Shown: in pieces, positions 7,343 to 61,183 of the stretch
Numbering within the stretch: position 1 is the first letter of the stretch
Layout: each line of letters opens with the position of its first letter
Position numbers and translations under genes: made by a program
IMG/VR virus record: IMGVR_UViG_3300020473_000011
Location: 124,001-188,000 of that record
Strand: one strand, 5' to 3'
Length of the DNA stretch: 64,000 nt
The notes under the pieces: generated by a model
What the model was told of the DNA's origin: nothing
Seen by the model: the letters and a program-made list of their open reading frames with translations, nothing else
Database searches by the model: none

Positions 7343-7445
7343 GACGGCCTTATCTTACGCGAATAATTGAAACAGGTGGCCATTTTACAGCGATAAGCAC
7401 ACGGGTAATGGCGCACTGAGAACTAACCGAAAGGACATTGTCATC

Positions 7446-8246
7446 ATGACACAGAAGACCGACACTATACGCATGGTAAAGGTAAACCACCCTGCGAAGA
7501 ACCGAACGTATTACTTGACCGAAGGTAACTACCACTATCTCTTTGCGAGCCGTGGACACCTACCCCAGTCAGACCCTGCTGCGCATGAAAAGACACTGGA
7601 TGCGCAGTCCTCTGTTATCCTTGAAGACGGTGCGCTGTGGCTTAACCGTCTTTGGCCAGCGGCTACCGTCAATGAACTGATGGCGTTGATTGGCGAGCCT
7701 GCCCTGCCAAACGACCAGTCGCTGCCCTATAAGAGCGCCACGTATCAGGGTACCACGTACTTTATCACTGACGCTGTCTGGGATGAGCAAATAGCACCGA
7801 CCTTCGCGCGCCTTGGAAGCTTCCCTGTGGAACGCGCAGCGCTTTATTGTGACTATGCCTACAAAGCAGGGAGCACTGTGAAGTGTACGTATTCATGTGT
7901 CGTCGGGAGCTACCACCAAATCTTGCTACAGCTCAAAGCACTGGCCGAGGTCGTTGACCTTAACGAAGAGCCTGAGCTGGTACACATCGAGCCGTACAAG
8001 GAAACCTATACACTTGATGAGGTGAAGCAGCTACTGGACGAGAACACCGCACTTAAAAAAGATGTTGAGCGCTTAGAGACAAATCAGGTCTGGTACGTCA
8101 ATGCACTAGAAGCACTCTCACCGTTCCGCTATGCAGCCCACCAGCTGCTCACTGAGCCTGAGCGTTTGTCACACCGTGAAGCCCTTCAAAAGGTTCTCGA
8201 TATGGCCGAAGCTTATTTTGCGAAGAAGGATAGCCAGTCTAGCTAA
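7446..8246 (+). CDS. Hypothetical protein
   Basis: 266-aa ORF, AAGGA RBS, C-terminal coiled coil. Confidence 0.75.
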   Translation: MTQKTDTIRMVKVNHPAKNRTYYLTEGNYHYLFASRGHLPQSDPAAHEKTLDAQSSVILEDGALWLNRLWPAATVNELMALIGEPALPNDQSLPYKSATYQGTTYFITDAVWDEQIAPTFARLGSFPVERAALYCDYAYKAGSTVKCTYSCVVGSYHQILLQLKALAEVVDLNEEPELVHIEPYKETYTLDEVKQLLDENTALKKDVERLETNQVWYVNALEALSPFRYAAHQLLTEPERLSHREALQKVLDMAEAYFAKKDSQSS

Positions 8247-8327
8247 CACCCGCCGTGGCCTTGTACTCTATTGTGGTCAGTTGTACAATCAACTGACCCT
8301 AAACACTACTATAGAGACTGAGATACA

Positions 8328-8699
8328 ATGACATCACGCGCAAGTAAGATCCTTGAAACCCACCAGCACACGTTAAGCGAAGACGCTGCCAAGACGTATG
8401 CCCGTCAGCTTAGTGACGTAATCCCTAATTTTAATCATGCTGCAACGAGCCAGCGTGCTGACGCAGGCTACCTAGCCTTGGCACTACAGCACGGCTTAGC
8501 TGCCCAGCTAGAAGGGATTAAGGCCACAATCGAAGAGCTTTCAGACGAGTACTACGCTGACGACGTGAATGCCCAACGCAAACTATGGCTGCTTAAACAA
8601 GTTTTCGCTGAGTTAGATATAAAGCAGTCTAAGGTATCAAGCCTAGACCGCTTACTGACGGCTGCCTATAAGGGTGACTGGCCAGACGACCTCGCTTAA
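8328..8699 (+). CDS. Hypothetical protein (possible internal head protein)
   Basis: 123 aa; N-terminus MTSRASKILE...LSE resembles those of 23411..23755, 41168..41758 and 41805..42197. Confidence 0.7.
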   Translation: MTSRASKILETHQHTLSEDAAKTYARQLSDVIPNFNHAATSQRADAGYLALALQHGLAAQLEGIKATIEELSDEYYADDVNAQRKLWLLKQVFAELDIKQSKVSSLDRLLTAAYKGDWPDDLA

Positions 8700-32513: not shown

Positions 32514-33058
32514 TAAAGCGCCTCTTCGGGGATCTGAATATCAGACGTTTGCCCGAATTTACTCGAAACCATTGGCACATGTAAATGGCGTATTACGATT
32601 GGCAGCGACGTACGGAAGTCAAACACACACTGTGTGACATCCTTTGGTATCTCTCCGCCGTCACGTGTGGTGAAGACTTCGTCAATACCACGATGAATGC
32701 TCACAAGCTCATACGACTGACCATCATCCGCTTTAACGTACTTAAATTCGAAGCAGGCTTTTGAATGGGCTTCTATAACCTGACCGCCAAACAGTTCGAG
32801 TTCTTCTTCCATTCTCGCGTTGATGATTGTGTACACGATAGAAAGCTCGTCCGTCATTTTACCGTGCTCGTAGTTGACGTGAATACGTTGGTCGGCTGTG
32901 CTGATAATATCGGGGCGTATCGCACGGCTGCTGTAGTTAAACACGTGGTAAGTGTGCTCGTAGTTAACTACGCTTGAGCTGTCCAGCGTGTTTTGGATAA
33001 CTGTTGCATTTACGTCGTTTGGCAGCTGAAATCGAAATCGTAGGGTCGTTGCGTCCAT
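32513..33058 (-). CDS. Hypothetical protein
   Basis: 181-aa ORF, GAGGA RBS. Confidence 0.65.
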   Translation of the reverse strand: MDATTLRFRFQLPNDVNATVIQNTLDSSSVVNYEHTYHVFNYSSRAIRPDIISTADQRIHVNYEHGKMTDELSIVYTIINARMEEELELFGGQVIEAHSKACFEFKYVKADDGQSYELVSIHRGIDEVFTTRDGGEIPKDVTQCVFDFRTSLPIVIRHLHVPMVSSKFGQTSDIQIPEEAL

Positions 33059-33060
33059 GG

Positions 33061-33288
33061 TTAGTCCTCGTGTTGGCGCTGGTTGTGTAGCGCGATAATC
33101 TTTTCAGCTTTCATCACCACGTCGTTAGGGCGCTGGCCACTTAACGACATTGCGTGTACGGTTGCTATCGGTGCCGTTGTAACAGTGCTGTACGTAAAGG
33201 CACGCGTGCCAGCAAAGCTCTCTTTCAGCGCTTCCTCACTCGCTAATACGTTACCACCGTCTAGGTCAATGTATATCGTTGTACTCAT
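33061..33288 (-). CDS. Hypothetical protein
   Basis: 75-aa coupled ORF. Confidence 0.55.
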   Translation of the reverse strand: MSTTIYIDLDGGNVLASEEALKESFAGTRAFTYSTVTTAPIATVHAMSLSGQRPNDVVMKAEKIIALHNQRQHED

Positions 33289-33485
33289 AGCTGATTTACC
33301 TTTGCTTCTGGGTCTTTACGACCACCGTGACCACCATACTTACAATCGGTACACTCCAAGGATGTCTGGTATTCGCAGTCAAACTCTCGCGTCCATTCAT
33401 CCGTATAGCCGAGGCACTTAGGATGTTTTGCAGGTACTGAGGTGTCCAAGCTGGGCAAGATCTCGCTTAATAGGCGGTTCTTCAT
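33285..33485 (-). CDS. Small Cys-rich protein
   Basis: C...C...CTDC. Confidence 0.55.
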   Translation of the reverse strand: MKNRLLSEILPSLDTSVPAKHPKCLGYTDEWTREFDCEYQTSLECTDCKYGGHGGRKDPEAKVNQL

Positions 33486-33598
33486 TATTTGGGTCTCGGT
33501 CTCTATTATTAAATTTTAGTATCGCTGGTAAGATAGCAGACGTTTGTTTAAGTTACAAGCGTTGTACAACGAAAAGTTCTGTGGGACAGTCAATTTGG

Positions 33599-33805
33599 TT
33601 AAATTGCGGGCATGAAGACGCCACCACAGTAGCGGGTGGTCAGGTCGTTAATGAGTGCTTGCTCAGAGGGGGTTATTTTCGGGTGGTCTACGTACCGCCA
33701 GCGAGTTTCATACATCTGTATTGCATGGTCTGGCCGAATGTAGCGACCATGCTGATCCCACAGCAAGGAATCCAGCTGCGTGTATAGCTTGCGGTCAATC
33801 AGCAT
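33599..33805 (-). CDS. Small protein resembling partners of AbiEii-type nucleotidyltransferase toxins
   Basis: QLDSLLWD...AIQMYETRWRYVD...SEQALINDL...GGVF matches my recollection of the YERNWRHVD family; no search was run. Confidence 0.55.
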   Translation of the reverse strand: MLIDRKLYTQLDSLLWDQHGRYIRPDHAIQMYETRWRYVDHPKITPSEQALINDLTTRYCGGVFMPAI

Positions 33806-33808
33806 TCG

Positions 33809-34213
33809 TTAACGTACCATCAGGGCAATGCCTGCGGCTGCGAGTAGCCCGCCAATGATAAAGAAGCCATCGGCCATCCGTCGTATGACCTTTCGATAGT
33901 TGTATTGTAAGTACAAGCGCTCTTGATGTATGCCACCGCCTTCTTCGCCGTGGATATGGAATCGTATAGACTTACCGCGTTCAATGAGTTTTTCTAGGTG
34001 GTCGTCGTCCATAAAGCGTATGTACATGACGGATTCGCGCTCGGTGAAAGGTATGGTTTCCCAATCCAGTCTGTCCCACAAGTGTGAGTGTGGTAATAAG
34101 TGGTTTGTTCTGTCAATGCCATGTGGCGGGTGTATATAGTCGACTTGCAGGTCATCGACCATTTGTGGTGTTGGAAAGCGTCTGTAATACGCCAGTATTA
34201 TTCTTTTGAACAT
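33809..34213 (-). CDS. Hypothetical membrane-anchored protein
   Basis: C-terminal TM segment. Confidence 0.6.
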   Translation of the reverse strand: MFKRIILAYYRRFPTPQMVDDLQVDYIHPPHGIDRTNHLLPHSHLWDRLDWETIPFTERESVMYIRFMDDDHLEKLIERGKSIRFHIHGEEGGGIHQERLYLQYNYRKVIRRMADGFFIIGGLLAAAGIALMVR

Positions 34214-34415
34214 AGCGATGTCTTATCGGTTTTTCTAAGTACGGGTAAAAAGAGTGATTGTACAACCAATTTGGGCAAATGGTATTAAACCAACCAGTTG
34301 TACAATCACTTAAATAAGATGAGCGCCACCCTTGTTTATCCAGTAGGGAACAAACAATGGTTTGGTTCTGGTTGGGAACTATGTCTCATCTTATCCCTAA
34401 GTATCTCTCGGTGTC

Positions 34416-35501
34416 CTAGGGGGCGAGAACTATAGCAAGGTTCTTCATCAATTTCCAGCTGATTAACGACGGAATCCCGCTGCAACGCTCGTATTGTGAC
34501 TTGATTGGCGTCTCATTATCAAAGCCCCATGTATCGGGTACCGTTTGCAGGCGCAGACTCTCGCGAACAGTGAAGCGACGGCTTGACCCATCAGACATAC
34601 GCATGATCTGTGCAGCGTTCTTACCCATCGGACTCGACATAATGGTGCGTGATGGACGGTCTTTGCTGATCACAGACAGGAACGTCGTGCGGCCACCCGA
34701 TGAATAGTAGGCTCCAAGCATGAAGTCTTTTTGGTCTTGTTCAGGTAGATTACGCCAGTTACCACCTTCGGGAACCTTATGTACAAACGGTTTCTCATCG
34801 TTACGCAGTGTCCATTTCTCGTGGTACTCATGGTTATTGTGACCGTCGGGCGTCTCAGGTAAACCTTTTAGTGCATCGGCCAGCGTGAATTGCACAGGGC
34901 TTTTCTCTGGGAACTGGAACTCACCCTCAAGGTCTTTACGTACCCCAACGATAAAGACGCGCTCTCGGCGCTGGGGCACACCATACTCGGAGCAATCAAT
35001 AACTTGCCACTTAACTTTGAACTCGGTAGACAGGCGCTCAATCATTTCCTCAAAGAAAGGCATATTCTTGCGGTCAACGAGACCACGCACGTTTTCTATT
35101 AGGAACCCTTTAGGCTTCTTGTATAGGTAGCAATCAACGAGTAGTTCAGCAAGGTTACCATTCTTTTCGCAAGCAGCGCCGTTACCCTCTCCTGATCGTG
35201 ACCATGGTTTACAGGGGAATCCGCCTGTGTAGACGTCAGCATCAGGGATGTCGTCAAAGTTAAGTGTCTTTGCATTGAGTACAACGGCAACGTTGGCAAT
35301 GTTCTTGTTAAAGTTACGTACGGCGTGTTTGTTATTATCAAAGGCGAAGATTGTTTCAAAGCCTGCGTACTCTGTCCCAATTGCCCCCACACCTGCACCG
35401 CAGTAGAAGTCCACAACTGTTAACCCGTTCTTTGGTAACTGGGTCATTTGCTCACCATTAGGGCAGCCGTGCAGCTGCGCCTCGTGCACATAATTGTTCA
35501 T
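34416..35501 (-). CDS. C5-cytosine DNA methyltransferase (orphan)
   Basis: Motif I DFYCGAG, IV GGFPC, VI ENV, VIII PQRRERVF, IX RRFTVRE..RLQ. Confidence 0.95.
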   Translation of the reverse strand: MNNYVHEAQLHGCPNGEQMTQLPKNGLTVVDFYCGAGVGAIGTEYAGFETIFAFDNNKHAVRNFNKNIANVAVVLNAKTLNFDDIPDADVYTGGFPCKPWSRSGEGNGAACEKNGNLAELLVDCYLYKKPKGFLIENVRGLVDRKNMPFFEEMIERLSTEFKVKWQVIDCSEYGVPQRRERVFIVGVRKDLEGEFQFPEKSPVQFTLADALKGLPETPDGHNNHEYHEKWTLRNDEKPFVHKVPEGGNWRNLPEQDQKDFMLGAYYSSGGRTTFLSVISKDRPSRTIMSSPMGKNAAQIMRMSDGSSRRFTVRESLRLQTVPDTWGFDNETPIKSQYERCSGIPSLISWKLMKNLAIVLAP

Positions 35502-35834
35502 ATCTTGGTCTCATTTCTTAGTCAAATTAAGTAGCTCTCTGTAGCTACTTTTTTAAGTCTATCAGTTTTGTTTGTGAGGACCAACTAACTTGTTAGATCT
35601 TTACTGGTGGGGTTGTAGTGCGGGATTGCTGAGTATTTATACTCAAATCGTTGTACAAAACTACTTGCGGTGCAGGCGATTTCGTGTACACTATATACTC
35701 GTAAAAAGGCTAAAACGTGACTAGTAACTTGCCGTAAAAATGTACTAAGATAAAGGGACTAGCTTTGCGACCAGCACTTCAAGATCGTGTTAGCCGTTAG
35801 ATGGATTTAAGAAAAAGAATTAAGGTAGACCGAT

Positions 35835-36713
35835 ATGACACACGCAATGAACCCCGAAAATTTGGGGTTGTTAAAGAAGACCCTCGATTCGCTGCCCGAT
35901 GGCGTGCTGGTCGTTTCTCCTGACCGAAAAATTGTTTATGCGAATGACCGATTTATCGCTATGTGGGGGATCCCAAGCACCGTCATGGGGACTCATGACG
36001 ACAGCAAGATACTTGATTATGTTGAGGCGCAGGTCACTGACCTTGAGACTTTCCGAAAGCAGGTAGAGGATTTATACGAGACACGCCGCGAAACAGAAGA
36101 TGAGATCCATCTTACTGATGGCCGTGTTTTTCTCCGCCGAGGGACGTACCACGTTAATGCTGAGGGTGAGACCGCCCACATTTGGGTGTTCTCCGATATA
36201 ACCAGCCTAAAAGCATTTGAGCGCTGTTCGCTTACTGGCGTATTTAACCGCCGTAAGTTCGATGAAGAGTTCGGCTTGCGCCTGCTTGGCATGACAGACA
36301 AGGATATTATTGGCGTAGCGCTACTAGACCTTGATAACTTCAAGCAGTACAACGACAGCTATGGCCACCAGCAAGGCGACCGCTTACTTTCAGAGGTTGG
36401 ACGCTTGTTCCTTGGACGCCTACGTCGTAGAGGCGACACAGCTTATCGTATTGGGGGAGAAGAGTTCCTACTAGTCTGTAAGTGCCGCACTGAGCAACAC
36501 CTGTTTGATTTCATTGATTCAATACGCGCTGATGTTCAGCGCCTTGGCCGTGAGCATGAGAAGAACGCACCTTATAATGTCGTGACCTTTTCGGCAGGCG
36601 TTGGTTTCATACAGGGCAGCGCGAAGGCTGACTACGTGTTTGCCCAAGTAGATAAGGCGCTCTACGCGGCAAAAGAAAAAGGCCGCAACCAACTCGTAAG
36701 GGCTAAGATTTAG
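35835..36713 (+). CDS. PAS-GGDEF diguanylate cyclase
   Basis: PAS domain (LDSLPDGVLVV...YANDRF..MWG), LTGVFNRR, DLDNFKQYNDSYGHQQGD, RxxD I-site (RRGD) and GGEEF active site. Confidence 0.95.
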   Translation: MTHAMNPENLGLLKKTLDSLPDGVLVVSPDRKIVYANDRFIAMWGIPSTVMGTHDDSKILDYVEAQVTDLETFRKQVEDLYETRRETEDEIHLTDGRVFLRRGTYHVNAEGETAHIWVFSDITSLKAFERCSLTGVFNRRKFDEEFGLRLLGMTDKDIIGVALLDLDNFKQYNDSYGHQQGDRLLSEVGRLFLGRLRRRGDTAYRIGGEEFLLVCKCRTEQHLFDFIDSIRADVQRLGREHEKNAPYNVVTFSAGVGFIQGSAKADYVFAQVDKALYAAKEKGRNQLVRAKI

Positions 36714-36735
36714 TCCTTACCTTTCCCCAGACACG

Positions 36736-36766
36736 AAAAAGCCAGCATTACGCTGGCTCTCTTTTT
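36736..36766. terminator. Bidirectional terminator
   Basis: AAAAAGCCAGC-ATTAC-GCTGGCT...TTTTT between convergent genes. Confidence 0.75.
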
Positions 36767-36831
36767 CCTAAGCTAATCGCTGGGCAGCGATTGGCGGTAA
36801 AGTACCACCGAACTAGCTGCACGGCAAGTAG

Positions 36832-37344
36832 TTATGCGGCTTTTTGAAATTCAATGTCTTTAAGTGATTCAATTGTAGCCTTGCTTAGCTTAATGTCTTT
36901 TTGTGCATGAAATGCGACGGCTAACCAAACGAGCTTAAAGTTAGCCACACTCGGAACAGGTTTACCGAGCTGAGCTGCGTCCCACTCATCTTTAGACTCG
37001 AAGTCGCAAGCACATGCGCCTTCTAGATGCTCGGGAGCCTCGCGTTCAACCGTATGCCCATGCTTAGCCTCTTCGGTTTCTAAGTGTGTCCAAACCTTTT
37101 CCAGTAACTCGGTGTTACCTTCTTGTTCCATGATGTAGGCATCGACGTCTTGGCGTAGCAAGCCCATCACACGTTGTGCGAGGTCTTCCCAGTCTTCTGA
37201 GAGTGCATCAGCAAAGCGCCACGTATTCTCAACAGTAGGCTCTAGCATAAGCGTCGTGTAGATGCTCGAAGCACGGTCAAACCGCGCCTGTGCAAGCTGC
37301 TCGGGTGTCTGGCTATCACGTGTGTCGTCGGTCGGAAACATCAT
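36832..37344 (-). CDS. Hypothetical protein
   Basis: 170 aa, AAGGAG RBS. Confidence 0.7.
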   Translation of the reverse strand: MMFPTDDTRDSQTPEQLAQARFDRASSIYTTLMLEPTVENTWRFADALSEDWEDLAQRVMGLLRQDVDAYIMEQEGNTELLEKVWTHLETEEAKHGHTVEREAPEHLEGACACDFESKDEWDAAQLGKPVPSVANFKLVWLAVAFHAQKDIKLSKATIESLKDIEFQKAA

Positions 37345-37355
37345 AGTACAGCTCC

Positions 37356-37781
37356 TTAATGTACGTGCTTATGATCAGGGTTGTCACAACCGCACATGTG
37401 ATAGTCAACTCTGGACTGCTTCGGTATATTACGTAAGACCTCAAGAACACCTTCCATATCTACAGGTGTCAGCTGATAGTGGGTGAAGCTCATGTGGTCT
37501 TCCAAAATCTTATCGTCTGCGTCAAAGATGCGCAGTGCCATTGCACCTAGCTCATCGCCTTTTTTGATGATGAAGAACTCAACGGTGCTCCCGTCGGTAG
37601 ATTCTAAATACATACGGTAGGTGACCTCCGCTGCTCCAAAAGGAATACTACAGCGCGTGAAGTATGTTTGGGCATGCTTCAAGCCGATGTAAGTGCCCAG
37701 TACGTAGGTCGTGAAAGCCTCGGCCACTGGGTTCTCTCTGAACTCTGGGATCTCCGAGATATGAAAGTTTTGTTTAGACAT
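37356..37781 (-). CDS. Hypothetical protein
   Basis: 141 aa with a C-terminal HMCGC..DHKHVH tail. Confidence 0.7.
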   Translation of the reverse strand: MSKQNFHISEIPEFRENPVAEAFTTYVLGTYIGLKHAQTYFTRCSIPFGAAEVTYRMYLESTDGSTVEFFIIKKGDELGAMALRIFDADDKILEDHMSFTHYQLTPVDMEGVLEVLRNIPKQSRVDYHMCGCDNPDHKHVH

Positions 37782-37790
37782 AAGGTACCC

Positions 37791-38228
37791 TTAATCTTCT
37801 GTTGATGCGCAGTATATAATAGATAGCTTGCGGGTGTCAGGCTCGATACCGTGCATGCCGAAATTACGCGAGGCATCACCCGAGTTATCGTAAACATCCT
37901 CAACAGGAAACGTTTCTTTTAGTTGGTCAACATGAACGCAAATCGAACCTAGTTCCATCATGGCAGTTAGGATTGATTCTTGCTGGCCTGCTTCAAGAGC
38001 GCGGGCAAAAGTTCGGTAGTTTCTTTCGTCGGCGGTGCTTTTTGCAGCCTTGTTTATCTCGTTGCCTAGGATTGACTCAACAGCAACATCGTTACCACAG
38101 CCATTGTCTAGCGCGCTCGATAGTGATTCGGTGGCTTCAACCAGTGCGAGGGCAAGTGTCATCGGGTCTTGCTCTGCTAGTAACTTAATAGCGCGGGCTT
38201 TCTTGTCTTCAAATGTTTGACCTAACAT
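37791..38228 (-). CDS. Hypothetical protein
   Basis: 145 aa, AAGGA RBS. Confidence 0.7.
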   Translation of the reverse strand: MLGQTFEDKKARAIKLLAEQDPMTLALALVEATESLSSALDNGCGNDVAVESILGNEINKAAKSTADERNYRTFARALEAGQQESILTAMMELGSICVHVDQLKETFPVEDVYDNSGDASRNFGMHGIEPDTRKLSIIYCASTED

Positions 38229-38257
38229 AGTTAGTGTCCTTATCGGTTAGTTAATTT

Positions 38258-38476
38258 TTATAAGTACGGTGCGAAGAGTGCTGCTAGAAAGCACATTATA
38301 AGCGCAGCACAGTAATAGTCGACCATGTCAACTCGTTGCTTCTTGCGTGTCGGCGCTTTACTCTTCGTTACCGTTCGAGGCCGTGTCGGGGACACTGACC
38401 TTGGTACCACATAGCGTCTAGGTCGTACCTTTCTGGGTTTCGTCGGATCTGCGCTCGGTACTACTTTGCGCATCAT
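38258..38476 (-). CDS. Basic protein with a C-terminal TM
   Basis: Arg/Pro-rich N-terminus and hydrophobic tail. Confidence 0.55.
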   Translation of the reverse strand: MMRKVVPSADPTKPRKVRPRRYVVPRSVSPTRPRTVTKSKAPTRKKQRVDMVDYYCAALIMCFLAALFAPYL

Positions 38477-38490
38477 CAGGCGACCCCTTC

Positions 38491-38835
38491 TTAATCTTTG
38501 CGCACCCAGCCTATACTTAGTACATAGCGCGTGCCCTTTTCTACGCGGGTAACGCTATGTGAATACAGGTCAGGTCTGAATACTTTTAGTCTCGGCCAAT
38601 TAATTATACAGCTGCTACACTCGAAGTTACCACCGTTGGCTGCGTGCTTTAGAATGATGTTTACTCTAAAGTGACGCCCAGCCTTAACTGCATCAACATG
38701 AGGTTTAATCTCACTGTTCGCAGGAAAGCGTAATAGATAGCAGTCCGCTTTAATTAGCGTCGAACGAAAAAGTAGCATTCGCTGATAGCCTGACTCTTGT
38801 CGGCCGTTTATCCAGCGGAACAGTTCTTTAAACAA
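38491..38835 (-). CDS. 2OG-Fe(II) oxygenase
   Basis: HVD...GGNF...HSV...RYVLSIGW gives the HxD/H facial triad and the RxS-like 2OG site. Confidence 0.85.
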   Translation of the reverse strand: MFKELFRWINGRQESGYQRMLLFRSTLIKADCYLLRFPANSEIKPHVDAVKAGRHFRVNIILKHAANGGNFECSSCIINWPRLKVFRPDLYSHSVTRVEKGTRYVLSIGWVRKD

Positions 38836-39024
38836 AACCGTGCTCCTTCCGTTAGTCTCATATCACAACCCTAACGTTGTACAACGATTCTAAACTCCTG
38901 CGGCGCAGGTGTCAACGACGAATTTTAAAAATTATCACAAAGCATGCTTAAACGCTGATATACTGAACAGGCTGTATAGAGACAGCACTAGAAAAACATT
39001 AATTGAGACTAAAGAGGTACCCTT

Positions 39025-39534
39025 ATGGGAATTTTTTTCACGGGTTTTGCCCGCCATGGTAAAGACAGCGCGGCTGAAATCGTAAAGAAGCATTTTGGCT
39101 TAACGTTCGCTGCGTCGTCAGAGTTTGCATGCGACCTGTTTTTATTCGATAAGCTTAAAGATGAGTTTGGGTACGCGACAAAAGAGCAGTGCTTTGCGGA
39201 TCGTGTTAATCATCGTCAGCGATGGTTTGACGAAATTGTGGCGTTCAATTCACCTGACCTAGGCCGTCTAGGCGAGCTTATTTTTGAGAAGCACGACATC
39301 TACTGCGGGATCCGTAATCTCGACGAACTGAACGTATTACGTGAGAAAGGATTAGGCAATCTTGTTATCTGGGTTGATGCAACTGAGCGCCTAGGCTCGG
39401 TCGAGTCGGGAAGCAACACCATTGGCAAAGAGCACGCCGACATCATCATTGAAAACAATGGCACGCTCGAAGAGTTTGAAGAGAAGGTGTTCAACTTATT
39501 CGCATTACTCACGTCTAAGAAAGGTACCGTATGA
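39025..39534 (+). CDS. Deoxynucleoside monophosphate kinase-like P-loop protein
   Basis: GFARHGKDSAAE P-loop, GIR...E, DIIIENNGTLEE. Confidence 0.75.
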   Translation: MGIFFTGFARHGKDSAAEIVKKHFGLTFAASSEFACDLFLFDKLKDEFGYATKEQCFADRVNHRQRWFDEIVAFNSPDLGRLGELIFEKHDIYCGIRNLDELNVLREKGLGNLVIWVDATERLGSVESGSNTIGKEHADIIIENNGTLEEFEEKVFNLFALLTSKKGTV

Positions 39535-39959: not shown

Positions 39960-40227
39960 GGCTAGCGAAACAGGTGATGCCTTTGACTACGATAAGCCAA
40001 TTTGCGTTTATGTAGGGAAGTGGTCTTTGTGGCAGCGCCTTAGTATGGCTTGGCGTGCATTCCGTAAACCTGATGCTTACCGCGCAGCCCCAATTATAGG
40101 CTGTGCTATGTTAGACGGTACAGTGCAAGCTAACGTTGTTATGACGCATGAGGATAACTCTAAGCGTGAAGTTAGCTATGTGCTTGCGTACCGCCTTATA
40201 AATGATAAGGAAAGTGCAGGGGATTAG
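39937..40227 (+). CDS. Hypothetical protein
   Basis: Likely start at MRKASE. Confidence 0.55.
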   Translation: MSFTSMRKASETGDAFDYDKPICVYVGKWSLWQRLSMAWRAFRKPDAYRAAPIIGCAMLDGTVQANVVMTHEDNSKREVSYVLAYRLINDKESAGD

Positions 40228-40688
40228 GCTGGGGCGCGCTTGCGCCTCACTCTTCCTGATTGTTTACGATGAGCAGGCACCTCATTATTTGGTCGGTACC
40301 GTGCACACAGCTGAACAGTTAAATCACACATCGCGACATCGAACATCCCAATGTGACAATCATCAACTTGAATGCCTAGCTCACCTGCCAGCCACGCGTA
40401 GGCTTGTTTACGCTTCATGAGCTTGTCTTTCCAAAGAGGATCAAACGCACGATGCGCTCGACTCTTTGCGGCTCTAAGTTGAGCGTTAGCCAGTCGACCT
40501 AGTGGTCGTATACCGTTCCCGTCATCTAAATGGCAGCCAACATACGCGCCGCATTCTTTTTCGCATTGCCAAAAGTTTCTAAAGTGTAGGTCAGGGCGGT
40601 TGGGGTAGATCTCACGACCTGTCACAAGCTCAGCAAGTACGGTTTCACTTACTGTCGAACAGTAAGGACACGCTAACGGTTTTTTCAT
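40224..40688 (-). CDS. DUF3268-like zinc-finger protein
   Basis: CPYC...IYP.RPDL...CGAYVGCH...PLGRLAN..LR...AH.AFDPLW...AYAWLA...CHIGMFD. Confidence 0.85.
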   Translation of the reverse strand: MKKPLACPYCSTVSETVLAELVTGREIYPNRPDLHFRNFWQCEKECGAYVGCHLDDGNGIRPLGRLANAQLRAAKSRAHRAFDPLWKDKLMKRKQAYAWLAGELGIQVDDCHIGMFDVAMCDLTVQLCARYRPNNEVPAHRKQSGRVRRKRAPA

Positions 40689-56112: not shown

Positions 56113-59100
56113 TTAGTACGCCATCGCTCTTAGGTTAGCTACGACTGGACGGTGAAGCGCCGAGCCTGACAGTACAAGCATGATTCGAGTCTTGTCGTCA
56201 TTAAAGTCTGACGCTTTGTACTCGTACTCGTATAAGTCAGTGTCTAGCTGTGACTTCTCAGGGTTAATCATTTCAACCCATTGAGAACTACCGCTTGACT
56301 CGTCTTGGTAGTAAACCGAGACGGCTGCTTCGCCTTTCAGTTCTGCTTCAAACTTAACTGAAAGCGTACTTGGGTCGTCGCCTGCGCGGAAACTACGCGT
56401 ACAGTACACGGCTTTCCCTGCTTGCGATCCCAGCATCATTAGAAGCTCTGGCCACATCAGCGGCGTTAGATGCTTCGTACCTGTCAGCTTGGCTTTAACC
56501 GCGATAGAACCTGACACCTCTTCGTTAAGACGTAGTGGGGTGTTTTCGTTCATATCATAGTTACGACCATCCTCATCGGTGAACGTAATTGTGATGTTGC
56601 TGTCCTGTGACGGACGCATCGTACCACCTACTACCATGGCATCTGATAGCTTGTTCACGTTGAAGCTGCCTAGCGGGATCTCACGCTCAGTGTTCACGAA
56701 CTCAGCACGTAGTAAGCGGAACGTTAAGTCTGCTGACTGGTGCGGTGTCCACGTTGTCGCATTCGAAGACGAAAGCATTACACCGATTTGGTAAGCCTGC
56801 GCACTGATCACCTGACCGTCTTCTGATACACCACCTAGTTCAGCGATGGCCATTTCGTGGTCTGGGTCATCTGTAAGTACTACGAACGCATACTCAGTAC
56901 CTGCTTCAATGAATGTTGGGTCAAACGTAATACGCGTCCAACCGTGCTTAGCAGGGTTTGCGTATGACTCTGGCTTACCATCAATCACAGGGTCTTGAAT
57001 GTGGTGCGTATTCGTATCATAAAGCAGTAGGTCTTGCGGGTTAACGCGTACTTCTGCAATCGTCTTATCAGGAATACCTACTGATGTCGTACGTAATTGA
57101 ACAACGATTTGGTCGCTACCAATTGTCGTCATCTTAATGTCTACGCCTGACATGTAGTGGTCTTCTTTCAGCGTGAATGTCTGTGCTAGTGGATCCCAGC
57201 GCTGGAAGCCACCTGAGAACTTAGTTTGCCATTCTTCTGTCGTAACCGTACCTTTGCCTGTGAAGCTTGCTTGAGCCTCTGTGCCAAGCGTACCTTTCAC
57301 ATCAACTAGCTTACGGCCAGCTGTGAACGTGTTACCTTCAATTGAAATCTTACCTTTGATTACACCGTTGTTGTCAGCAACAACTGGGTTACCATCAACT
57401 TCAAGTACAGGCATTGTAACTTCGTCAAACGTTAAGCTTTGGATTTGCTCAGTCGGGCGGAAGCCTTCAATTGTGAACTCGATGTCCAGTGCACGAAGGA
57501 ACTCTAGTGCGCGCGTTGTCTCACCCACTTTAGCCGAACTTACGTTACCTTGGAATTTAAAGCCGTATACGCCGTGGTTCACAACTGTTGAGTTGATTGA
57601 GCCACCTGACTTCAAGTTCATCTTAGTTTCTGTCCAAACGTCAACCGCTGGCACCAGTGTCATTTTAGCTGGGATTGGCTTAAATGCCGCATAAGGGTTC
57701 ACCTTCATTGAGCCTGTCATTTCTGTTTGCTCAACTGGGTTACCAGCATCAATTAGTACCGTGTGCTCATATTCAAGCGTCCAAGGTTTTGTTTCCTTGG
57801 TTGGGTTCAAGCCGTTCGGGTTCATGTCGATAGGCAAGATAAGCTCTTCACGGGCAGGGTTGATTGTTGCACGAGCATCAATGTCACCATCTTGGCCAAT
57901 GATTAAGTTTTCCATACCTAAGTCACGCATGTCGTCGTCAAGCATTGGGTCTACGAATAAGCCATGCGTAGCACTTGGTGCATTACGAGAGGTGTCACTC
58001 TTTAAGCGCTCTAATGCGACTAAGTCATACAAGTCTGAGATACTGCGCTGCATCTTGTTCAGGTCTTGCATCTTAACAACTTTTACGCCGTCAAGTTTAA
58101 GCTCTGGGTCTTCCCACCACGTATGATAGATTTCAGCCAGTGATAATGCTTTGTTTGGTAGTGTTGGCGCTCTAGGTGGCGCAAAAGCACTCGCCATACC
58201 ACGCGCAAGCGTAAGCTGACCTTCTGGGTTTAAGTACAGACGGTCAATACGCGGCATACGCCAGCGGTAGTCAACAGAGATATATAGTTGGTCACCTGCA
58301 ATCTCGTCTACTTCTGCAAGCTCAACAGGTTGGCCATTCGGGCTATCAACAGGCACGATGTTAGCTGGAATGTCGAAACCTTTACGGTCACCCGTCGCTG
58401 TCACAAATGAGGTAATGTCCGTGTAGTAGATAAACTCCACGAAGAACGTACCACCCTTGCCAGGTCCCTCACTAAGCCAGTAAATAACAGACTCATTGGT
58501 GCCGCCGTTACCGTATTCCCAGTCAATACCTTTCTGGTATTCAGTGCCTGCGCCATTATGAACACGCGTGATAGCTTGAACCGACGTAACACCTACAGGG
58601 TTCTCATTGATGTCACCTAAGTCACCCACGTTACGACGTGATAGCTGGTGATTTGTCACCTTCGCAGGTGCAATAACTTCAATGATTTCCTCAACAGGTC
58701 CAAAATCAAGTGCCACCGTCATCGTGCTGTCAGCACGCGGTACAAAGCCCACAGGCTCAGCATTTGTCTGGTATGTTGTAGCTGCATTCATGTACTCACG
58801 ACGTAAGTCGTGCAGTAGGTCAATCTCACGGCCACCAACGTGTGCACGGCCTGATGAAATCGAGTAAGTCGTCGTGTCTTTGGTATCGTCCCACGTGAAG
58901 TTATCAAGACGTACATCTAAGCCGTTTACAGCATAGTTACCGTGTGCGTCTACATCATAGCGAACGATTGTACCGATAAGCTCTTGGGCTTCGTCAGACA
59001 GTAGTGCTTCTTCTTCAAGTACAGCACCTTCTGAGATCTTATACACCTCATAGAAAGTACCTTTCGCGTCAGGGTCATACGACGTGCCCCACTTAGCGAC

Positions 59101-59871
59101 TGCGTCAGGTGATGTTAGGTCTTGGTCACCACCAACCTCTGCACCTGAGTTATCTACCCATACACCGAAGCTGATCACACCCGATGCCGACCCCATTAGT
59201 TGTGGTGACTCAGGCACGTAGATAACAGCACCATTTACATACATGGCGGCAGCTTCTGCGCGGATAGTAATGTCACCACCGACAGGTGTTGACGTGTAAA
59301 GTGAACCGCCTGATAGTAACTGGCCGTTACGTAGTAACGCGTTACCTAGACCCTTAACCCATTGAGAAACTGCTTTAAGCAGCTTAGGGTGGGCATCAGC
59401 ATCCATATTATGCTCGTCGATGTCGACTGAGTCTTCGTACTGGAATACAAACAAGTCACTGATGTTAATGTTCGTTAGCGTCACGATTAGACGAAGCGAG
59501 ATCGAGCCATCGAAGTAGTACGTTAGTGCCTGTGACGGCTGACCTAGCGCAAGTAGGAACTCTTGCGGCACTTCTTCGCTAGACTCACCGAATAGGTAAA
59601 TCTCACCGATTTCTTTATCTTCATTTGTAGCGTTCGGCGGAATATTACAGATAAACTCAATTGAGTTATCTGATATTACCCGACGTGACGTGACAGGTGC
59701 TTCAAACCATAGGTTGCCCACTGAGTCAGTGTCACGGCTTGGTGATAGCGAACCTTTGTTTGTGGAAATCGCAAACTTAGTAGGGTAGATGTTCCAACCT
59801 TCTTTGTTCGCAGCATTGATGGTCTTACTCAGACCCTCATTTGTTATGACTCCAATTACGGCCATGCTCAT
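56113..59871 (-). CDS. Large baseplate/tail-associated protein, DUF4815-like
   Basis: GLFVDPMLDD, VNPYAAF, DPLAQTF, GVMLSSSNATTWTPHQSADLTFRL motifs. Confidence 0.85.
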   Translation of the reverse strand: MSMAVIGVITNEGLSKTINAANKEGWNIYPTKFAISTNKGSLSPSRDTDSVGNLWFEAPVTSRRVISDNSIEFICNIPPNATNEDKEIGEIYLFGESSEEVPQEFLLALGQPSQALTYYFDGSISLRLIVTLTNINISDLFVFQYEDSVDIDEHNMDADAHPKLLKAVSQWVKGLGNALLRNGQLLSGGSLYTSTPVGGDITIRAEAAAMYVNGAVIYVPESPQLMGSASGVISFGVWVDNSGAEVGGDQDLTSPDAVAKWGTSYDPDAKGTFYEVYKISEGAVLEEEALLSDEAQELIGTIVRYDVDAHGNYAVNGLDVRLDNFTWDDTKDTTTYSISSGRAHVGGREIDLLHDLRREYMNAATTYQTNAEPVGFVPRADSTMTVALDFGPVEEIIEVIAPAKVTNHQLSRRNVGDLGDINENPVGVTSVQAITRVHNGAGTEYQKGIDWEYGNGGTNESVIYWLSEGPGKGGTFFVEFIYYTDITSFVTATGDRKGFDIPANIVPVDSPNGQPVELAEVDEIAGDQLYISVDYRWRMPRIDRLYLNPEGQLTLARGMASAFAPPRAPTLPNKALSLAEIYHTWWEDPELKLDGVKVVKMQDLNKMQRSISDLYDLVALERLKSDTSRNAPSATHGLFVDPMLDDDMRDLGMENLIIGQDGDIDARATINPAREELILPIDMNPNGLNPTKETKPWTLEYEHTVLIDAGNPVEQTEMTGSMKVNPYAAFKPIPAKMTLVPAVDVWTETKMNLKSGGSINSTVVNHGVYGFKFQGNVSSAKVGETTRALEFLRALDIEFTIEGFRPTEQIQSLTFDEVTMPVLEVDGNPVVADNNGVIKGKISIEGNTFTAGRKLVDVKGTLGTEAQASFTGKGTVTTEEWQTKFSGGFQRWDPLAQTFTLKEDHYMSGVDIKMTTIGSDQIVVQLRTTSVGIPDKTIAEVRVNPQDLLLYDTNTHHIQDPVIDGKPESYANPAKHGWTRITFDPTFIEAGTEYAFVVLTDDPDHEMAIAELGGVSEDGQVISAQAYQIGVMLSSSNATTWTPHQSADLTFRLLRAEFVNTEREIPLGSFNVNKLSDAMVVGGTMRPSQDSNITITFTDEDGRNYDMNENTPLRLNEEVSGSIAVKAKLTGTKHLTPLMWPELLMMLGSQAGKAVYCTRSFRAGDDPSTLSVKFEAELKGEAAVSVYYQDESSGSSQWVEMINPEKSQLDTDLYEYEYKASDFNDDKTRIMLVLSGSALHRPVVANLRAMAY

Positions 59872-59968: not shown

Positions 59969-61183
59969 CTAGATGACCACTGTTCTTAATTTACGTACCC
60001 TTGGTAAATCACGTGCGGTGCCTTCAAGCTCCAACTTAACGCGGATGGTGTCACCCGATACGTCATCAAGCTTATAAGTACGTTCGATAAACCCGTCTTC
60101 TAGCGACACGCTGCCAGCCAGTGGCAACTCTTTCCACTCGCTGCCGATTGCATAGAATGCTTTGACCTTTGAGGTAATACCTGTACGAGACTCAAAGCTA
60201 ACGCGTACGTCAGCATTATCGCCTAATGGGATGTGCTTCGTTACGTAGTCGCCTGTCTCAACAACACCAGCACTTACAAGCGTTAAGCCCGTTAGAACCG
60301 TCGGTGATTTACTTGAAGTACCTGTCAGCTCTAATTTAGCCTCGGCTTTACCCGTGATCTTAGTAGGCAGTGATGTGATAGAGTCCTCTTTCAAGCGGTA
60401 CTGAGTACGGCCGTCAGGCATCATCAGTACGATAGCTGCGTCGGTCTCTTCATCAACACGGTCAGCGTTGAACTGCGCGTGGATAAGGTCAGCGTTATAC
60501 AAGTCGAAGGTACCTAATGAGTAACTACGCTTATTTGTGCTGTAAACAGCTTCGTGCAGGGTGAAACGCATATCAGTCTTCTGGTGTGGCGTCCATGTTG
60601 ACGCGTTAGAAGATGATAAGAGTGTCCCAATCTGGAAAGCTTGTGCCTTAATCCACTTGTCGTTACGTTGGTCGTACTCGCCAAGTGTCGCCACCTCTAC
60701 TTCCCAATGTGCGTCGTCGGCCATCAAGATGAAACAGTACTCAACACCGCGCTGTAAGCGGATAGGATCAAACGCAATACGTGTGTGCTTGTTGTTATCA
60801 ACGTTAGTAACTTCATCAAGTTCCACACGCTGACGTCTAAGGATCGTCTGCGTCGGTATACCGTTCTCACACGTACGGATGTCGAGGGTCATTGGCGTAT
60901 CGCCTTTCACCTTAACCCATACGTCAACAGCGGCTAGATCCACATCACGGTCAAACGTGAACGTTTGCGCTAGTGGGTCGTAACGCTGGTACGTTACCAG
61001 CGTGTTTGTCACGATGTTCTGCACCTCAGAGATCTGAGCGGTACCCTGACCCGTGAAAGAGGTTAGGGCAGTCGTGCCCATATCACCGTCTACACGTACT
61101 TCGTGTGTACCAGCCTTTTGATTAGCTGGGATTTTGAAGGAACCACGGATGGCTCCTTTTTCATCTGCAATAAATTCTGCCAT
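59969..61183 (-). CDS. C-terminal half of a second DUF4815-like protein
   Basis: DPLAQTF and GTLLSSSNASTWTPHQKTDMRF align with the C-terminus of 56113..59871. Confidence 0.85.
   Translation of the reverse strand: MAEFIADEKGAIRGSFKIPANQKAGTHEVRVDGDMGTTALTSFTGQGTAQISEVQNIVTNTLVTYQRYDPLAQTFTFDRDVDLAAVDVWVKVKGDTPMTLDIRTCENGIPTQTILRRQRVELDEVTNVDNNKHTRIAFDPIRLQRGVEYCFILMADDAHWEVEVATLGEYDQRNDKWIKAQAFQIGTLLSSSNASTWTPHQKTDMRFTLHEAVYSTNKRSYSLGTFDLYNADLIHAQFNADRVDEETDAAIVLMMPDGRTQYRLKEDSITSLPTKITGKAEAKLELTGTSSKSPTVLTGLTLVSAGVVETGDYVTKHIPLGDNADVRVSFESRTGITSKVKAFYAIGSEWKELPLAGSVSLEDGFIERTYKLDDVSGDTIRVKLELEGTARDLPRVRKLRTVVI

What the first reader, a model, noticed from the sequence alone, without database searches (positions are those of the whole stretch)
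35520..36713. Phage-encoded, apparently active PAS-diguanylate cyclase
Seen: intact GGEEF, DxDxFKxxND and RxxD I-site plus a PAS sensor; a standalone + strand gene with its own terminator and a TTGTACAA box upstream (35651). Known: c-di-GMP controls biofilm, motility and surface receptors; DGCs occur on SXT/R391 ICEs but are uncommon in phages. Inference: lysogenic conversion or receptor shut-off.
Basis: partly seen in the sequence, partly recalled or inferred. Interest (0 to 1): 0.65.

Follow-up and report, generated by a model that had tools for sequence, protein, structure and literature searches.

The report
Giant marine phage carries expressed diguanylate cyclase
A roughly 420-kb marine phage carries an intact, sensor-linked enzyme for making the bacterial signal c-di-GMP; the gene is conserved in the phage lineage and transcribed in ocean samples, so the phage probably rewires its host's behaviour, though the enzyme family itself is ordinary.

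Summary
Window 35835-36713 (+) encodes a 292-aa PAS-GGDEF protein. Every catalytic motif is intact: D165xD167xFKxxND174, D182, GGEEF 207-211, K280/R284. An RxxD I-site (R198-D201) is also present. The AF2 model (pLDDT 90) matches solved PAS/LOV-GGDEF cyclases.

The window is part of a 281.6-kb myovirus record, estimated 67% complete. Independent assemblies of the same phage reach 416-420 kb.

The gene sits at the same locus in diverged relatives (60-98% protein identity). It evolves under strong purifying selection (dN/dS 0.03). The phage copies form one clade nested in a bacterial ~300-aa PAS-GGDEF family found on high-GC contigs.

Contigs from marine metatranscriptomes cover exactly 35701-36774. 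That span runs from a conserved weak sigma70-type promoter to the predicted terminator. The flanks are silent.

The TTGTACAA box is real. It is a genome-wide phage regulatory palindrome: 149 copies, about 5 expected.

Lysogenic conversion is not supported. Receptor shut-off is untested.

Most likely the phage raises c-di-GMP in infected cells in a signal-gated, product-limited way. This is a new member of a known enzyme kind. No functional study of a phage cyclase turned up in the paper library.

The parts
35835..36713 (+). CDS of the 292-aa PAS-GGDEF diguanylate cyclase (stop codon included)
   Evidence: ORF; Pfam GGDEF and PAS families; AF2 pLDDT 90.1; Foldseek top matches are PAS/LOV-GGDEF cyclases
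35871..36212 (+). PAS sensor domain (residues 13-126), ligand unknown. It has no LOV cysteine (the motif reads NDRF, not NCRF). No His or Cys is among the invariant or nearly invariant columns of the PAS region.
   Evidence: Pfam PAS_8/4/7; domain model pLDDT 82.5; Foldseek matches short LOV, FixL, NifL and DosP PAS domains at 13-21% identity; family-invariant residues Y35 N37 W44 F73 D89 R101 R102
36225..36227 (+). Cys131 replaces the nearly invariant Asp of the DxLTG linker motif. All five phage copies have it.
   Evidence: Alignments
36228..36692 (+). GGDEF catalytic domain (residues 132-286)
   Evidence: Pfam 6.8e-35; PDB sequence matches to 48 DGC chains
36327..36380 (+). Metal and GTP-binding motif D165-L-D167-N-F-K170-Q-Y-N173-D174 ... 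G181-D182
   Evidence: Invariant across 50 homologues; positions
36426..36437 (+). I-site R198-R-G-D201 (RxxD), five residues before the A-site
   Evidence: Sequence; kept in all phage copies, variable (K/R) in the bacterial relatives
36453..36467 (+). A-site GGEEF (residues 207-211)
   Evidence: Sequence; invariant
35651..35658 (.). TTGTACAA box (core of the palindrome aATCGTTGTACAACGATt), at -50 to -43 from the inferred RNA 5' end. It is the phage's genome-wide regulatory motif.
   Evidence: 36 copies vs 1.86 expected in the window; 149 in the record, 72 of them fully intergenic; invariant in 5 diverged relatives; 0.5-1.4 per kb in the relatives, none in the bacterial loci
35665..35692 (+). 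Core promoter: -35 TTGCGG (35665-35670), 16-nt spacer, -10 TACACT (35687-35692; TACAAT in the diverged relatives)
   Evidence: Footprint alignment; same layout as the promoters at record positions 100782 and 102192
35701..35834 (+). 5' leader of 134 nt. The RNA 5' end is inferred at G35701. Conserved ATGTACTA at 35740-35747. The invariant AAGGTAGACCGATATG at 35822-35837 spans the ribosome-binding site and start codon.
   Evidence: L100 is GGG plus 35701-36774 with no mismatch; Logan RNA contigs of three runs start at 35708; no Rfam match and no unusual folding, z = 0.78
36740..36768 (+). Intrinsic terminator (7-bp stem, 5 G-C pairs, T tract) between convergent genes. RNA contigs end at 36774.
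35560..35592 (.). 33-nt block, invariant in five relatives apart from one G/A position. On the - strand it reads as a possible methylase promoter (TTGGTC, 17 nt, TAGACT).
   Evidence: the promoter reading is my inference from the sequence

Best explanation
The gene encodes a soluble, PAS-regulated diguanylate cyclase. A marine myovirus of about 420 kb captured it once from a bacterial ~300-aa PAS-GGDEF family and has kept it since. In infected cells it is transcribed as a monocistronic mRNA of about 1.07 kb. The promoter is a weak sigma70-type one and is wired into the phage's own TTGTACAA regulatory network. Shown here: the motifs, the fold, conservation in the phage lineage, and transcription. 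Inferred from what is known of the family (PleD, WspR, DgcR/PadC-type enzymes): the protein acts as a dimer, condenses two GTP into c-di-GMP when its PAS domain is in the activating state, and is capped by product binding at the RxxD I-site. That makes it a signalling device rather than a GTP sink. Inferred consequence: c-di-GMP in the virocell rises and acts on host effectors, since no PilZ, EAL or HD-GYP gene is found in the phage record. The cell is pushed from motile to sessile or aggregated physiology. That would place the slowly diffusing giant virions next to new hosts, and may also remove flagellar or pilus receptors.
For: All catalytic and I-site residues are present and invariant among 50 homologues. 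D182 at the base-specificity position is the canonical guanine-binding residue, not the Ser of the Hypr type (residue mapping from my own knowledge of PleD). AF2 pLDDT 90.1; best fold matches are 8c05 (LOV-DGC), 5xgd, WspR and PleD. The locus is syntenic in relatives of 98, 66, 66 and 60% identity. dN/dS is 0.03 overall, 0.037 for the PAS part and 0.022 for the GGDEF part, at dS 0.25; the distant pairs are saturated at synonymous sites with dN of only 0.22-0.31. The phage clade is monophyletic (SH-aLRT 99) inside a bacterial family. Bacterial homologues lie on 59-72% GC chromosomal contigs; the phage is 46-48% and the gene 50%. RNA: contigs of three metatranscriptome runs cover the gene, and one contig spans 35708-36774. 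An independent assembly gives GGG plus 35701-36774. Stretches at 34773-34969 and 35364-35560 are uncovered in all three RNA runs (35167-35363 in X7 and X20, 0.31 in X11), while a DNA run covers everything evenly. The box, the -35, the -10 and the ribosome-binding site are invariant across five diverged relatives. No PilZ, EAL or HD_5 in the record.
Against: No enzymology was done. The host is unknown, and so are the PAS ligand and the targets of c-di-GMP. Only 67% of the genome could be searched for effectors. The RNA evidence is from assembled contigs, which by the tool's own warning cannot prove ends, strand or level. The 5' and 3' ends are therefore inferences, resting on agreement between runs and assemblers and on the match with the promoter and terminator. 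The phage-specific D131C change in the DxLT linker motif could alter regulation or activity. The behavioural consequence is an argument from general c-di-GMP biology and was not tested.
Confidence: 0.62

Rival explanations
1. Lysogenic or episomal conversion. The phage persists as a prophage or phage-plasmid, and the cyclase is a moron expressed in the carrier state that changes host biofilm and motility to the benefit of the lysogen.
For: A stand-alone transcription unit with its own promoter and terminator. Two genuine tyrosine recombinases and a HipA-type toxin kinase in the record. The sequence also occurs in runs labelled with organism names rather than as metagenomes.
Against: No contig carrying the gene exceeds 1 Mb, none fetched shows bacterial flanks, and independent assemblies converge on 416-420 kb. 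GC equals that of the phage. The promoter carries the phage-wide box rather than an independent host-type promoter. Most neighbouring phage genes are transcribed in the same samples. The closest cultured relatives by tail sheath are large Rhizobium phages of about 154-208 kb, at 39% identity.
Confidence: 0.13
2. Superinfection exclusion or receptor shut-off is the selected function. High c-di-GMP stops flagella or pili that serve as receptors for this or competing phages.
For: General knowledge that c-di-GMP represses flagella and modulates type IV pili and surface glycans. One phage receptor pathway is c-di-GMP dependent (phage N4, PMC8669472). The gene is expressed from a host-RNA-polymerase-type promoter, which is compatible with early or middle timing.
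Against: The receptor and host are unknown and nothing in the locus points to a receptor. This is compatible with the best explanation and is more a sub-case than a rival.
Confidence: 0.15
3. c-di-GMP is read by the phage itself. A phage-encoded receptor would couple the PAS-sensed cytoplasmic cue (redox, energy or a metabolite) to phage timing, for example replication, lysis or the TTGTACAA regulon.
For: The PAS sensor is under selection as strong as the catalytic domain (dN/dS 0.037 against 0.022). The I-site is retained in all phage copies though it varies in the bacterial relatives. Hundreds of orphan genes remain, and 33% of the genome was not seen.
Against: No PilZ, EAL or HD-GYP gene in the 281.6 kb searched. 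No c-di-GMP riboswitch in the window. There is no positive evidence for a phage receptor.
Confidence: 0.07
4. The protein is not a c-di-GMP synthase in practice. It could be an inactive receptor, a maker of another cyclic dinucleotide (Hypr-type), or a counter-defence enzyme that interferes with host cyclic-nucleotide immunity.
For: GGDEF domains are sometimes degenerate or promiscuous. A weak Pfam match to the Cas10 palm2 domain lies below its cut-off (22.3 bits against 27). The D131C change sits in the linker.
Against: The A-site and every substrate-binding residue are intact and invariant, with Asp and not Ser at the specificity position. There is no PADLOC match. The best matches are all canonical cyclases.
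Confidence: 0.03

Closest known systems
Single-PAS/LOV-GGDEF cyclases of about 300 aa, such as the LOV-activated DGC of PDB 8c05, and the PAS-GGDEF part of PA0861 (5xgd)
   Same: Same architecture: an N-terminal helix, a PAS core, a short helical linker and a GGDEF domain. 8c05 is the best Foldseek match (E 8e-19) and a PDB sequence match (E 5e-19).
   Different: Only 22-25% identity. No flavin-adduct cysteine (NDRF in place of NCRF), so it is not a LOV photoreceptor. The ligand is unknown. Cys replaces the Asp of the DxLT linker motif. It is encoded by a phage.
PleD and WspR (canonical I-site-regulated diguanylate cyclases)
   Same: GGEEF A-site, RxxD I-site five residues upstream, the same metal, base and phosphate ligands, and the same catalytic fold (rmsd 2-4 A over about 170 residues).
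   Different: They are driven by receiver domains (phosphorylation) rather than a PAS domain, and they are chromosomal.
A bacterial family of ~300-aa PAS-GGDEF proteins. The only named member in the tree is from Stella humosa, P0033. The nearest member is P0005/P0126.
   Same: Full-length homology at 35-46% identity and the same conserved PAS residues. The phage clade nests inside this family.
   Different: The bacterial copies lie in ordinary chromosomal neighbourhoods on 59-72% GC contigs. The phage branch is long (1.02 substitutions per site). The phage copies always keep RxxD and carry C131.
GGDEF proteins annotated in other phages and mobile elements: Bacillus phage G gp350, Acetobacter phage phiAX1, Escherichia phage vB_EcoS-683R6, PHROG 5594 and six other PHROGs. 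Also DgcK and DgcL of SXT/R391 ICEs (from my own knowledge; not compared here).
   Same: A cyclase carried by a mobile genetic element (PMC12484599). Other large IMG/VR contigs carry PAS-PAS-GGDEF, REC-GGDEF, PAS-GGDEF-EAL and bare GGDEF genes.
   Different: Identity is below 40% and mostly confined to the GGDEF domain, so these are independent acquisitions with other sensor domains. For none of them did the paper searches find a functional study or in-situ expression data.

Membership tests
GGDEF diguanylate cyclase (PF00990), catalytically competent | GG(D/E)EF A-site | tested here: met
   GGEEF at residues 207-211; invariant in 50 homologues
GGDEF diguanylate cyclase (PF00990), catalytically competent | Metal-binding Asp, the Lys/Asn/Asp that hold GTP (PleD D327, K332, N335, D344), and the C-terminal Lys/Arg for the phosphates (K442, R446) | tested here: met
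   D165, D167, K170, N173, D182, K280 and R284 are present and invariant. The mapping onto PleD numbering is from my own knowledge of the motif spacing.
GGDEF diguanylate cyclase (PF00990), catalytically competent | Profile score and fold | tested here: met
   120.6 bits against a cut-off of 23.8; 48 PDB cyclase sequences matched; AF2 pLDDT 90; Foldseek probability 1.00
GGDEF diguanylate cyclase (PF00990), catalytically competent | Measured synthesis of c-di-GMP from GTP by a dimer | not testable with these tools
   Needs an enzyme assay or a reporter
Product-inhibited (I-site) cyclases | RxxD five residues upstream of the A-site | tested here: met
   R198-R-G-D201, then TAYRI, then GGEEF. Conserved in all five phage copies.
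PAS sensor domain | Profile match above cut-off, and a five-stranded beta-sheet fold with flanking helices | tested here: met
   PAS_8 33.2 bits (cut-off 21.8), PAS_4 31.9 (23.1), PAS_7 27.3 (27). The model has strands 23-27, 33-36, 87-93, 98-107 and 113-121. Foldseek matches PAS/LOV domains.
LOV photoreceptor | Flavin-adduct Cys in the NCRFLQ motif | tested here: not met
   The motif reads N37-D-R-F. There is no Cys in the PAS domain; the Cys residues are at 131, 215 and 217.
Hypr-GGDEF (cGAMP-producing) | Ser or Thr in place of the guanine-specifying Asp (PleD D344) | tested here: not met
   D182 is invariant
Phage moron or lysogenic-conversion gene | Autonomous promoter and terminator | tested here: met
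Phage moron or lysogenic-conversion gene | Recent foreign origin (deviant composition, patchy presence among relatives) | tested here: not met
   GC 50.3% against 47.7-47.9%. Present at the same locus in all relatives recovered, down to 60% identity.
Phage moron or lysogenic-conversion gene | Carried by a prophage and expressed in the lysogen | tested here: inconclusive
   No integrated copy seen, but recombinases are present. The RNA data cannot separate lytic from carrier state.

The most novel reading that the evidence does not exclude
A cosmopolitan ~420-kb marine phage senses a cytoplasmic cue through its own PAS domain. It sets the virocell's c-di-GMP level accordingly, either to drive infected cells into an attached or aggregated state that offsets the poor diffusion of a giant virion, or to time its own programme through an undiscovered phage c-di-GMP receptor. 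This would be virus-run second-messenger signalling rather than a passively carried host gene.
Probability: 0.25. Interest if true: 0.75.

Novelty: new member of a known kind. Interest (0 to 1): 0.52.

Why it matters
c-di-GMP decides whether bacteria swim or settle. A widespread ocean phage that makes this signal in a regulated way would be steering host behaviour, particle attachment and perhaps phage transmission during infection. Marine virus ecology does not yet take such an effect into account. The locus offers a compact, testable case: a 292-aa soluble enzyme with a mapped promoter and terminator, natural variants at 60-98% identity, and in-situ transcripts. The finding that other large viral contigs carry GGDEF genes with different sensor domains suggests a recurring strategy that nobody has yet studied experimentally.

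Tried and rejected
It did not recover the close bacterial family and gave no donor or host taxonomy.
- A search of 401 genomes of the class of G001 (Microvirga, so Alphaproteobacteria) found no match at E<=1e-35, and no names were shown, so it was uninformative.
- The full 416-420-kb assemblies are not held, so they could not be searched for effectors.
- Terminase families PF17289 and PF03237 are not in the record.
- No Rfam family, including c-di-GMP riboswitches, in the window or the leader, and the leader folds no better than shuffles.
- Homodimer prediction (complex prediction, two copies) returned no verdict, score 0.25 against a mark of 0.42. It is evidence neither for nor against dimerisation.
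- PADLOC gave no defence-system match for the cyclase or its three downstream neighbours.
- GTGTACAC, which overlaps the -10, was considered as a second operator but is not enriched genome-wide (7 copies against 4.2 expected).
- The alternative -10 TATACT at 35694-35699 was rejected. It is not conserved in the relatives and lies too close to the RNA 5' end at 35701.
- Host identity could not be established. The organism names of the runs are coded. The tail sheath is only 39% identical to that of Rhizobium phages.

Full report
**1. What is in the sequence**

Window 35835-36713 (+) is an ORF of 292 aa. Pfam finds a GGDEF domain at residues 132-286 (6.8e-35, 120.6 bits against a cut-off of 23.8). 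It also finds an N-terminal PAS domain, with PAS_8, PAS_4, PAS_7 and PAS all above their cut-offs.

- DLDNFKQYND at residues 165-174
- GHQQGD at 177-182
- RRGD at 198-201, exactly five residues before GGEEF at 207-211
- KEKGRN at 280-285

These positions are invariant in an alignment of 50 full-length homologues: D165, D167, F169, K170, N173, D174, G181, D182, R205, G207-F211, K280 and R284. By the known spacing of the PleD motif (my own knowledge), N173 corresponds to N335, D182 to D344, K280 to K442 and R284 to R446. D182 is the canonical guanine-specifying Asp and not the Ser of cGAMP-making Hypr-GGDEFs.

An AlphaFold2 model built on that alignment has mean pLDDT 90.1. Its best Foldseek matches are a LOV-activated diguanylate cyclase of the same size (8c05), the PAS-GGDEF part of PA0861, WspR, SadC, GcbC, DgcB and PleD. 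By sequence, 48 solved cyclase chains match.

The PAS domain modelled alone (pLDDT 82.5) resembles short LOV proteins, Rv1364c, FixL, NifL and DosP PAS domains at 13-21% identity. It lacks the LOV cysteine, reading N37-D-R-F. No His or Cys is among the invariant or nearly invariant columns of the PAS region. The ligand is therefore unknown.

**2. It is a phage gene, and an old one**

The window is positions 124001-188000 of a 281,557-bp IMG/VR virus record that CheckV rates 67% complete. This is the record's only GGDEF gene.

The record encodes a tail sheath, a gp5-like spike, a P2 gpI-like baseplate protein, DUF4815/VrlC-like virion proteins and 14 tRNAs. Most of the proteins scanned have no Pfam family. 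The tail sheath is 39% identical to that of Rhizobium phages of about 154-208 kb.

A 98%-identical protein, and one identical to the window's, lie on independently assembled contigs of 416,263, 416,434, 419,531 and 419,624 bp. No contig carrying them exceeds 1 Mb.

Four further copies, at 98, 66, 66 and 60% protein identity, sit in the same place where flanks are available: C5 methylase, then the cyclase, then the same small - strand ORFs.

- For window against the 98% copy, dS is 0.254 and dN 0.007, so dN/dS is 0.03. The PAS half gives 0.037 and the GGDEF half 0.022.
- The more distant pairs are saturated at synonymous sites, with dN of only 0.22-0.31.

In a maximum-likelihood tree the five phage sequences form one clade (SH-aLRT 99) on a long stem. 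Their sister, with support 84, is a bacterial protein (P0005). The whole group lies inside a well-separated bacterial family of ~300-aa PAS-GGDEF proteins (support 100).

Members of that family lie in ordinary chromosomal neighbourhoods (UvrD, AraC, LysR, TRAP transporters) on contigs of 59-72% GC. The phage loci are 46-48% GC and the gene 50%.

This points to one ancient capture followed by vertical inheritance and amelioration, not a recent moron.

Two features mark the phage clade. All copies keep the RxxD I-site, which varies between K and R in the bacterial relatives. All copies also have Cys131 where the family has the Asp of the DxLTG linker motif.

**3. It is transcribed in the ocean as its own unit**

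Three marine metatranscriptome runs hold the locus.
- When their contigs were laid on 33000-38900, contigs of all three runs begin at 35708. One contig of 1,067 nt runs from 35708 to 36774.
- 34773-34969 and 35364-35560 have no coverage in any RNA run. 35167-35363 is empty in X7 and X20, with depth 0.31 in X11.
- The X7 contig over the gene ends at 36774 and the next X7 contig starts at 36953; depth between them drops to 23.
- A DNA run covers the whole stretch evenly, so DNA carry-over does not explain the pattern.
- An independent assembly (megahit-style contig L100, recorded for two samples) is GGG followed by window 35701-36774 without a mismatch. Extra 5' G residues are what template-switching cDNA libraries add at RNA 5' ends. 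That reading is my inference.

The 3' end lies 16 nt after the hairpin at 36740-36758 and its T tract.

The tool warns that contigs cannot prove RNA ends, strand or level. I therefore treat +1 = G35701 and termination near 36770 as well-supported inferences. They rest on agreement between runs and assemblers and on the fit with the promoter and terminator.

**4. The promoter and the TTGTACAA box**

The box at 35651-35658 is real and very far from chance.
- The window has 36 copies against 1.86 expected.
- The record has 149 copies against about 5 expected. Of these, 72 lie wholly in the roughly 10% of sequence that is intergenic, mostly 25-100 nt before a start codon.
- The relatives have 0.5-1.4 copies per kb, and the bacterial loci have none.

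The box is the core of a longer palindrome, aATCGTTGTACAACGATt. It occurs in three promoter layouts:
- inside the 16-nt spacer of strong TTGCAA/TATACT promoters (9 sites);
- as the -35 element itself, 17 nt before TATAGT (about 22 sites);
- just upstream of a -35 element.

The cyclase promoter is of the third kind: TTGTACAA, 6 nt, TTGCGG (-35, 35665-35670), 16 nt, TACACT (-10, 35687-35692), 8 nt, G35701. Promoters at record positions 100782 and 102192 have the same design.

In an alignment of five relatives (protein identity down to 60%) several elements are invariant while the sequence between them has drifted:
- the box
- TTGCGG.GCAG
- TGTACA.T, which reads TACAAT (5 of 6 consensus positions) in the diverged copies
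- an ATGTACTA in the leader
- the 16-nt ribosome-binding and start block AAGGTAGACCGATATG

So the gene is read by host-type RNA polymerase from a weak core promoter, which presumably depends on whatever binds the phage's palindrome. The gene is integrated into the phage programme. Its timing could not be determined. No riboswitch or unusual structure is present in the 134-nt leader.

**5. How it most likely works**

Shown here: an intact, conserved and expressed PAS-GGDEF gene in a phage.

Inferred from the family: a dimeric enzyme whose PAS domain gates the encounter of the two GTP-loaded GGDEF domains, makes c-di-GMP, and is shut off by product at the I-site.

That both the sensor and the I-site are kept under purifying selection argues for a regulated signalling role rather than GTP depletion.

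The 281.6 kb available contain no PilZ, EAL or HD-GYP gene, so the targets are most simply the host's own effectors. In most bacteria a rise in c-di-GMP stops motility and promotes adhesion and matrix production. For a virion this large, which diffuses slowly, lysis inside an aggregate or on a particle would favour transmission. Loss of flagella or pili could in addition block superinfection. These consequences are hypotheses.

**6. Rivals**

Lysogenic conversion is not supported.
- No integrated copy was found.
- Composition matches the phage.
- The promoter is phage-type.
- 27 of 30 bins of the 5.9-kb stretch are transcribed in the same samples.

It is not excluded either. The record has two genuine tyrosine recombinases and a HipA-type kinase, and some runs that hold the sequence carry organism labels.

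A phage-internal c-di-GMP circuit has no positive evidence. A non-canonical product, an inactive domain or a defence-related role is unlikely given the intact residues and the absence of a PADLOC match.

**7. Comparison with what is known, and novelty**

The enzyme is a standard member of the GGDEF cyclases with a single PAS sensor. Its nearest solved analogue is the LOV-GGDEF protein 8c05, but it is not a LOV protein.

GGDEF genes in phages are rare but not unprecedented:
- seven PHROG families match, all of 'unknown function';
- 79 GenBank phage records match, including Bacillus phage G gp350, Acetobacter phage phiAX1 and an E. coli siphovirus; the short human-faecal contigs among them may not be phage;
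- at least 275 IMG/VR stretches match.

Among the IMG/VR hits are other large contigs with PAS-PAS-GGDEF (279 and 129 kb), bare GGDEF (222 kb), REC-GGDEF (190 kb) and PAS-GGDEF-EAL (165 kb). I did not check that these contigs are truly viral.

Paper searches found only passing annotations (phage G 'probable DgcQ', PMC12484599; mucR in sargassum viruses, PMC11295528) and no functional study of a phage cyclase. A broad comparative paper on jumbo phages names GGDEF only in its reference list and discusses no phage cyclase.

Verdict: a new member of a known kind. It is made more interesting by lineage-wide conservation, a mapped transcription unit and in-situ expression. Interest 0.52.

**8. Limits**

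The host, the PAS ligand, the timing and the phenotype are unknown. A third of the genome was not available. The RNA evidence is contig-based.

Noticed in passing
whole window and record; e.g. window 3721, 4245, 8281, 10224, 20774, 34258, 34298, 38877, 54580, 59902: TTGTACAA (core of aATCGTTGTACAACGATt) occurs 149 times in 281.6 kb, about 30 times the expected number, mostly just upstream of genes. It appears in three promoter layouts: in the spacer of TTGCAA-16-TATACT, as the -35 before TATAGT, or upstream of a -35. It looks like the operator of one phage regulator that could repress some promoters and activate others. The binding factor is unknown.
   Followed up: partly
window 930-2249 (-): A full HipA-type toxin kinase (HipA_C 4.9e-48 plus the Couple_hipA N-terminal domain) is encoded by the phage. 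It gives a weak PADLOC match to candidate system PDC-M03A.
   Followed up: no
record-wide, upstream of start codons (e.g. window 35827-35831 GACCG; many sites read TGAGAC): GAGAC/TGAGAC lies within 25 nt upstream of 67 of 411 predicted starts, against 7.6 expected, alongside ordinary AGGAG-like sites. AACCGAT/GACCGAT also recurs just before ATG. This is a phage-specific signal in the translation-initiation region or leader, of unknown meaning.
   Followed up: partly
window 35529-35550 and 35560-35592: In the methylase-cyclase intergenic region a hairpin is kept through compensatory changes (AAGTAGCT/AGCTACTT here, GCGGT/ACCGC in the relatives). Next to it a 33-nt block is invariant in five relatives, apart from one G/A position, at 60-98% protein identity. 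It may be the methylase promoter on the - strand (TTGGTC-17-TAGACT).
   Followed up: partly
window 34250 (- strand RNA 3' end): RNA contigs from two runs of one sample (X7 and X11) end at 34250 and continue into about 12 non-templated A residues (T on the + strand). This suggests a polyadenylated 3' end of the methylase transcript, just before the next gene's TTGTACAA boxes.
   Followed up: no
record G000:C1:89791-91374 (-), outside the window: The phage encodes a 527-aa CPA2-type cation/proton antiporter with a TrkA-N (Kef-like) domain, which is an unusual cargo for a phage.
   Followed up: no
record G000:C1:60733-61239 (-) and 228224-228760 (-), outside the window: Two genuine tyrosine recombinases (343 and 423 aa), plus a weak third match at 6553-8454. 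Their role (integration, dimer resolution or a mobile element) is unknown and bears on the phage's life style.
   Followed up: partly
record G000:C1:1-135: The left end of the record is a tandem array of the 15-mer TACTGACCATTGACC. It may be a genome-end repeat or an assembly artefact.
   Followed up: no
window 56113-59871, 59969-61183, 61206-63860 (all -): Three adjacent paralogous virion genes: two large DUF4815/VrlC-like proteins, and a 404-aa protein that matches only their C-terminal part (phrog_5986). They look like a diversified baseplate or fibre set.
   Followed up: no
IMG/VR loci L164, L170, L177, L184, L199: Other large viral contigs (129-279 kb) carry unrelated GGDEF genes with different sensors: PAS-PAS-GGDEF, bare GGDEF, REC-GGDEF and PAS-GGDEF-EAL. 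This suggests repeated capture of c-di-GMP enzymes by big phages. The viral nature of these contigs was not checked.
   Followed up: partly
window 38491-38835 (-), 39025-39534 (+), 40224-40688 (-): Neighbours of the cyclase include a weak 2OG-Fe(II) oxygenase-like protein, a weak dNMP-kinase-like protein and a DUF3268 zinc-finger protein. The three ORFs directly downstream (36832-38228) have no family at all.
   Followed up: no
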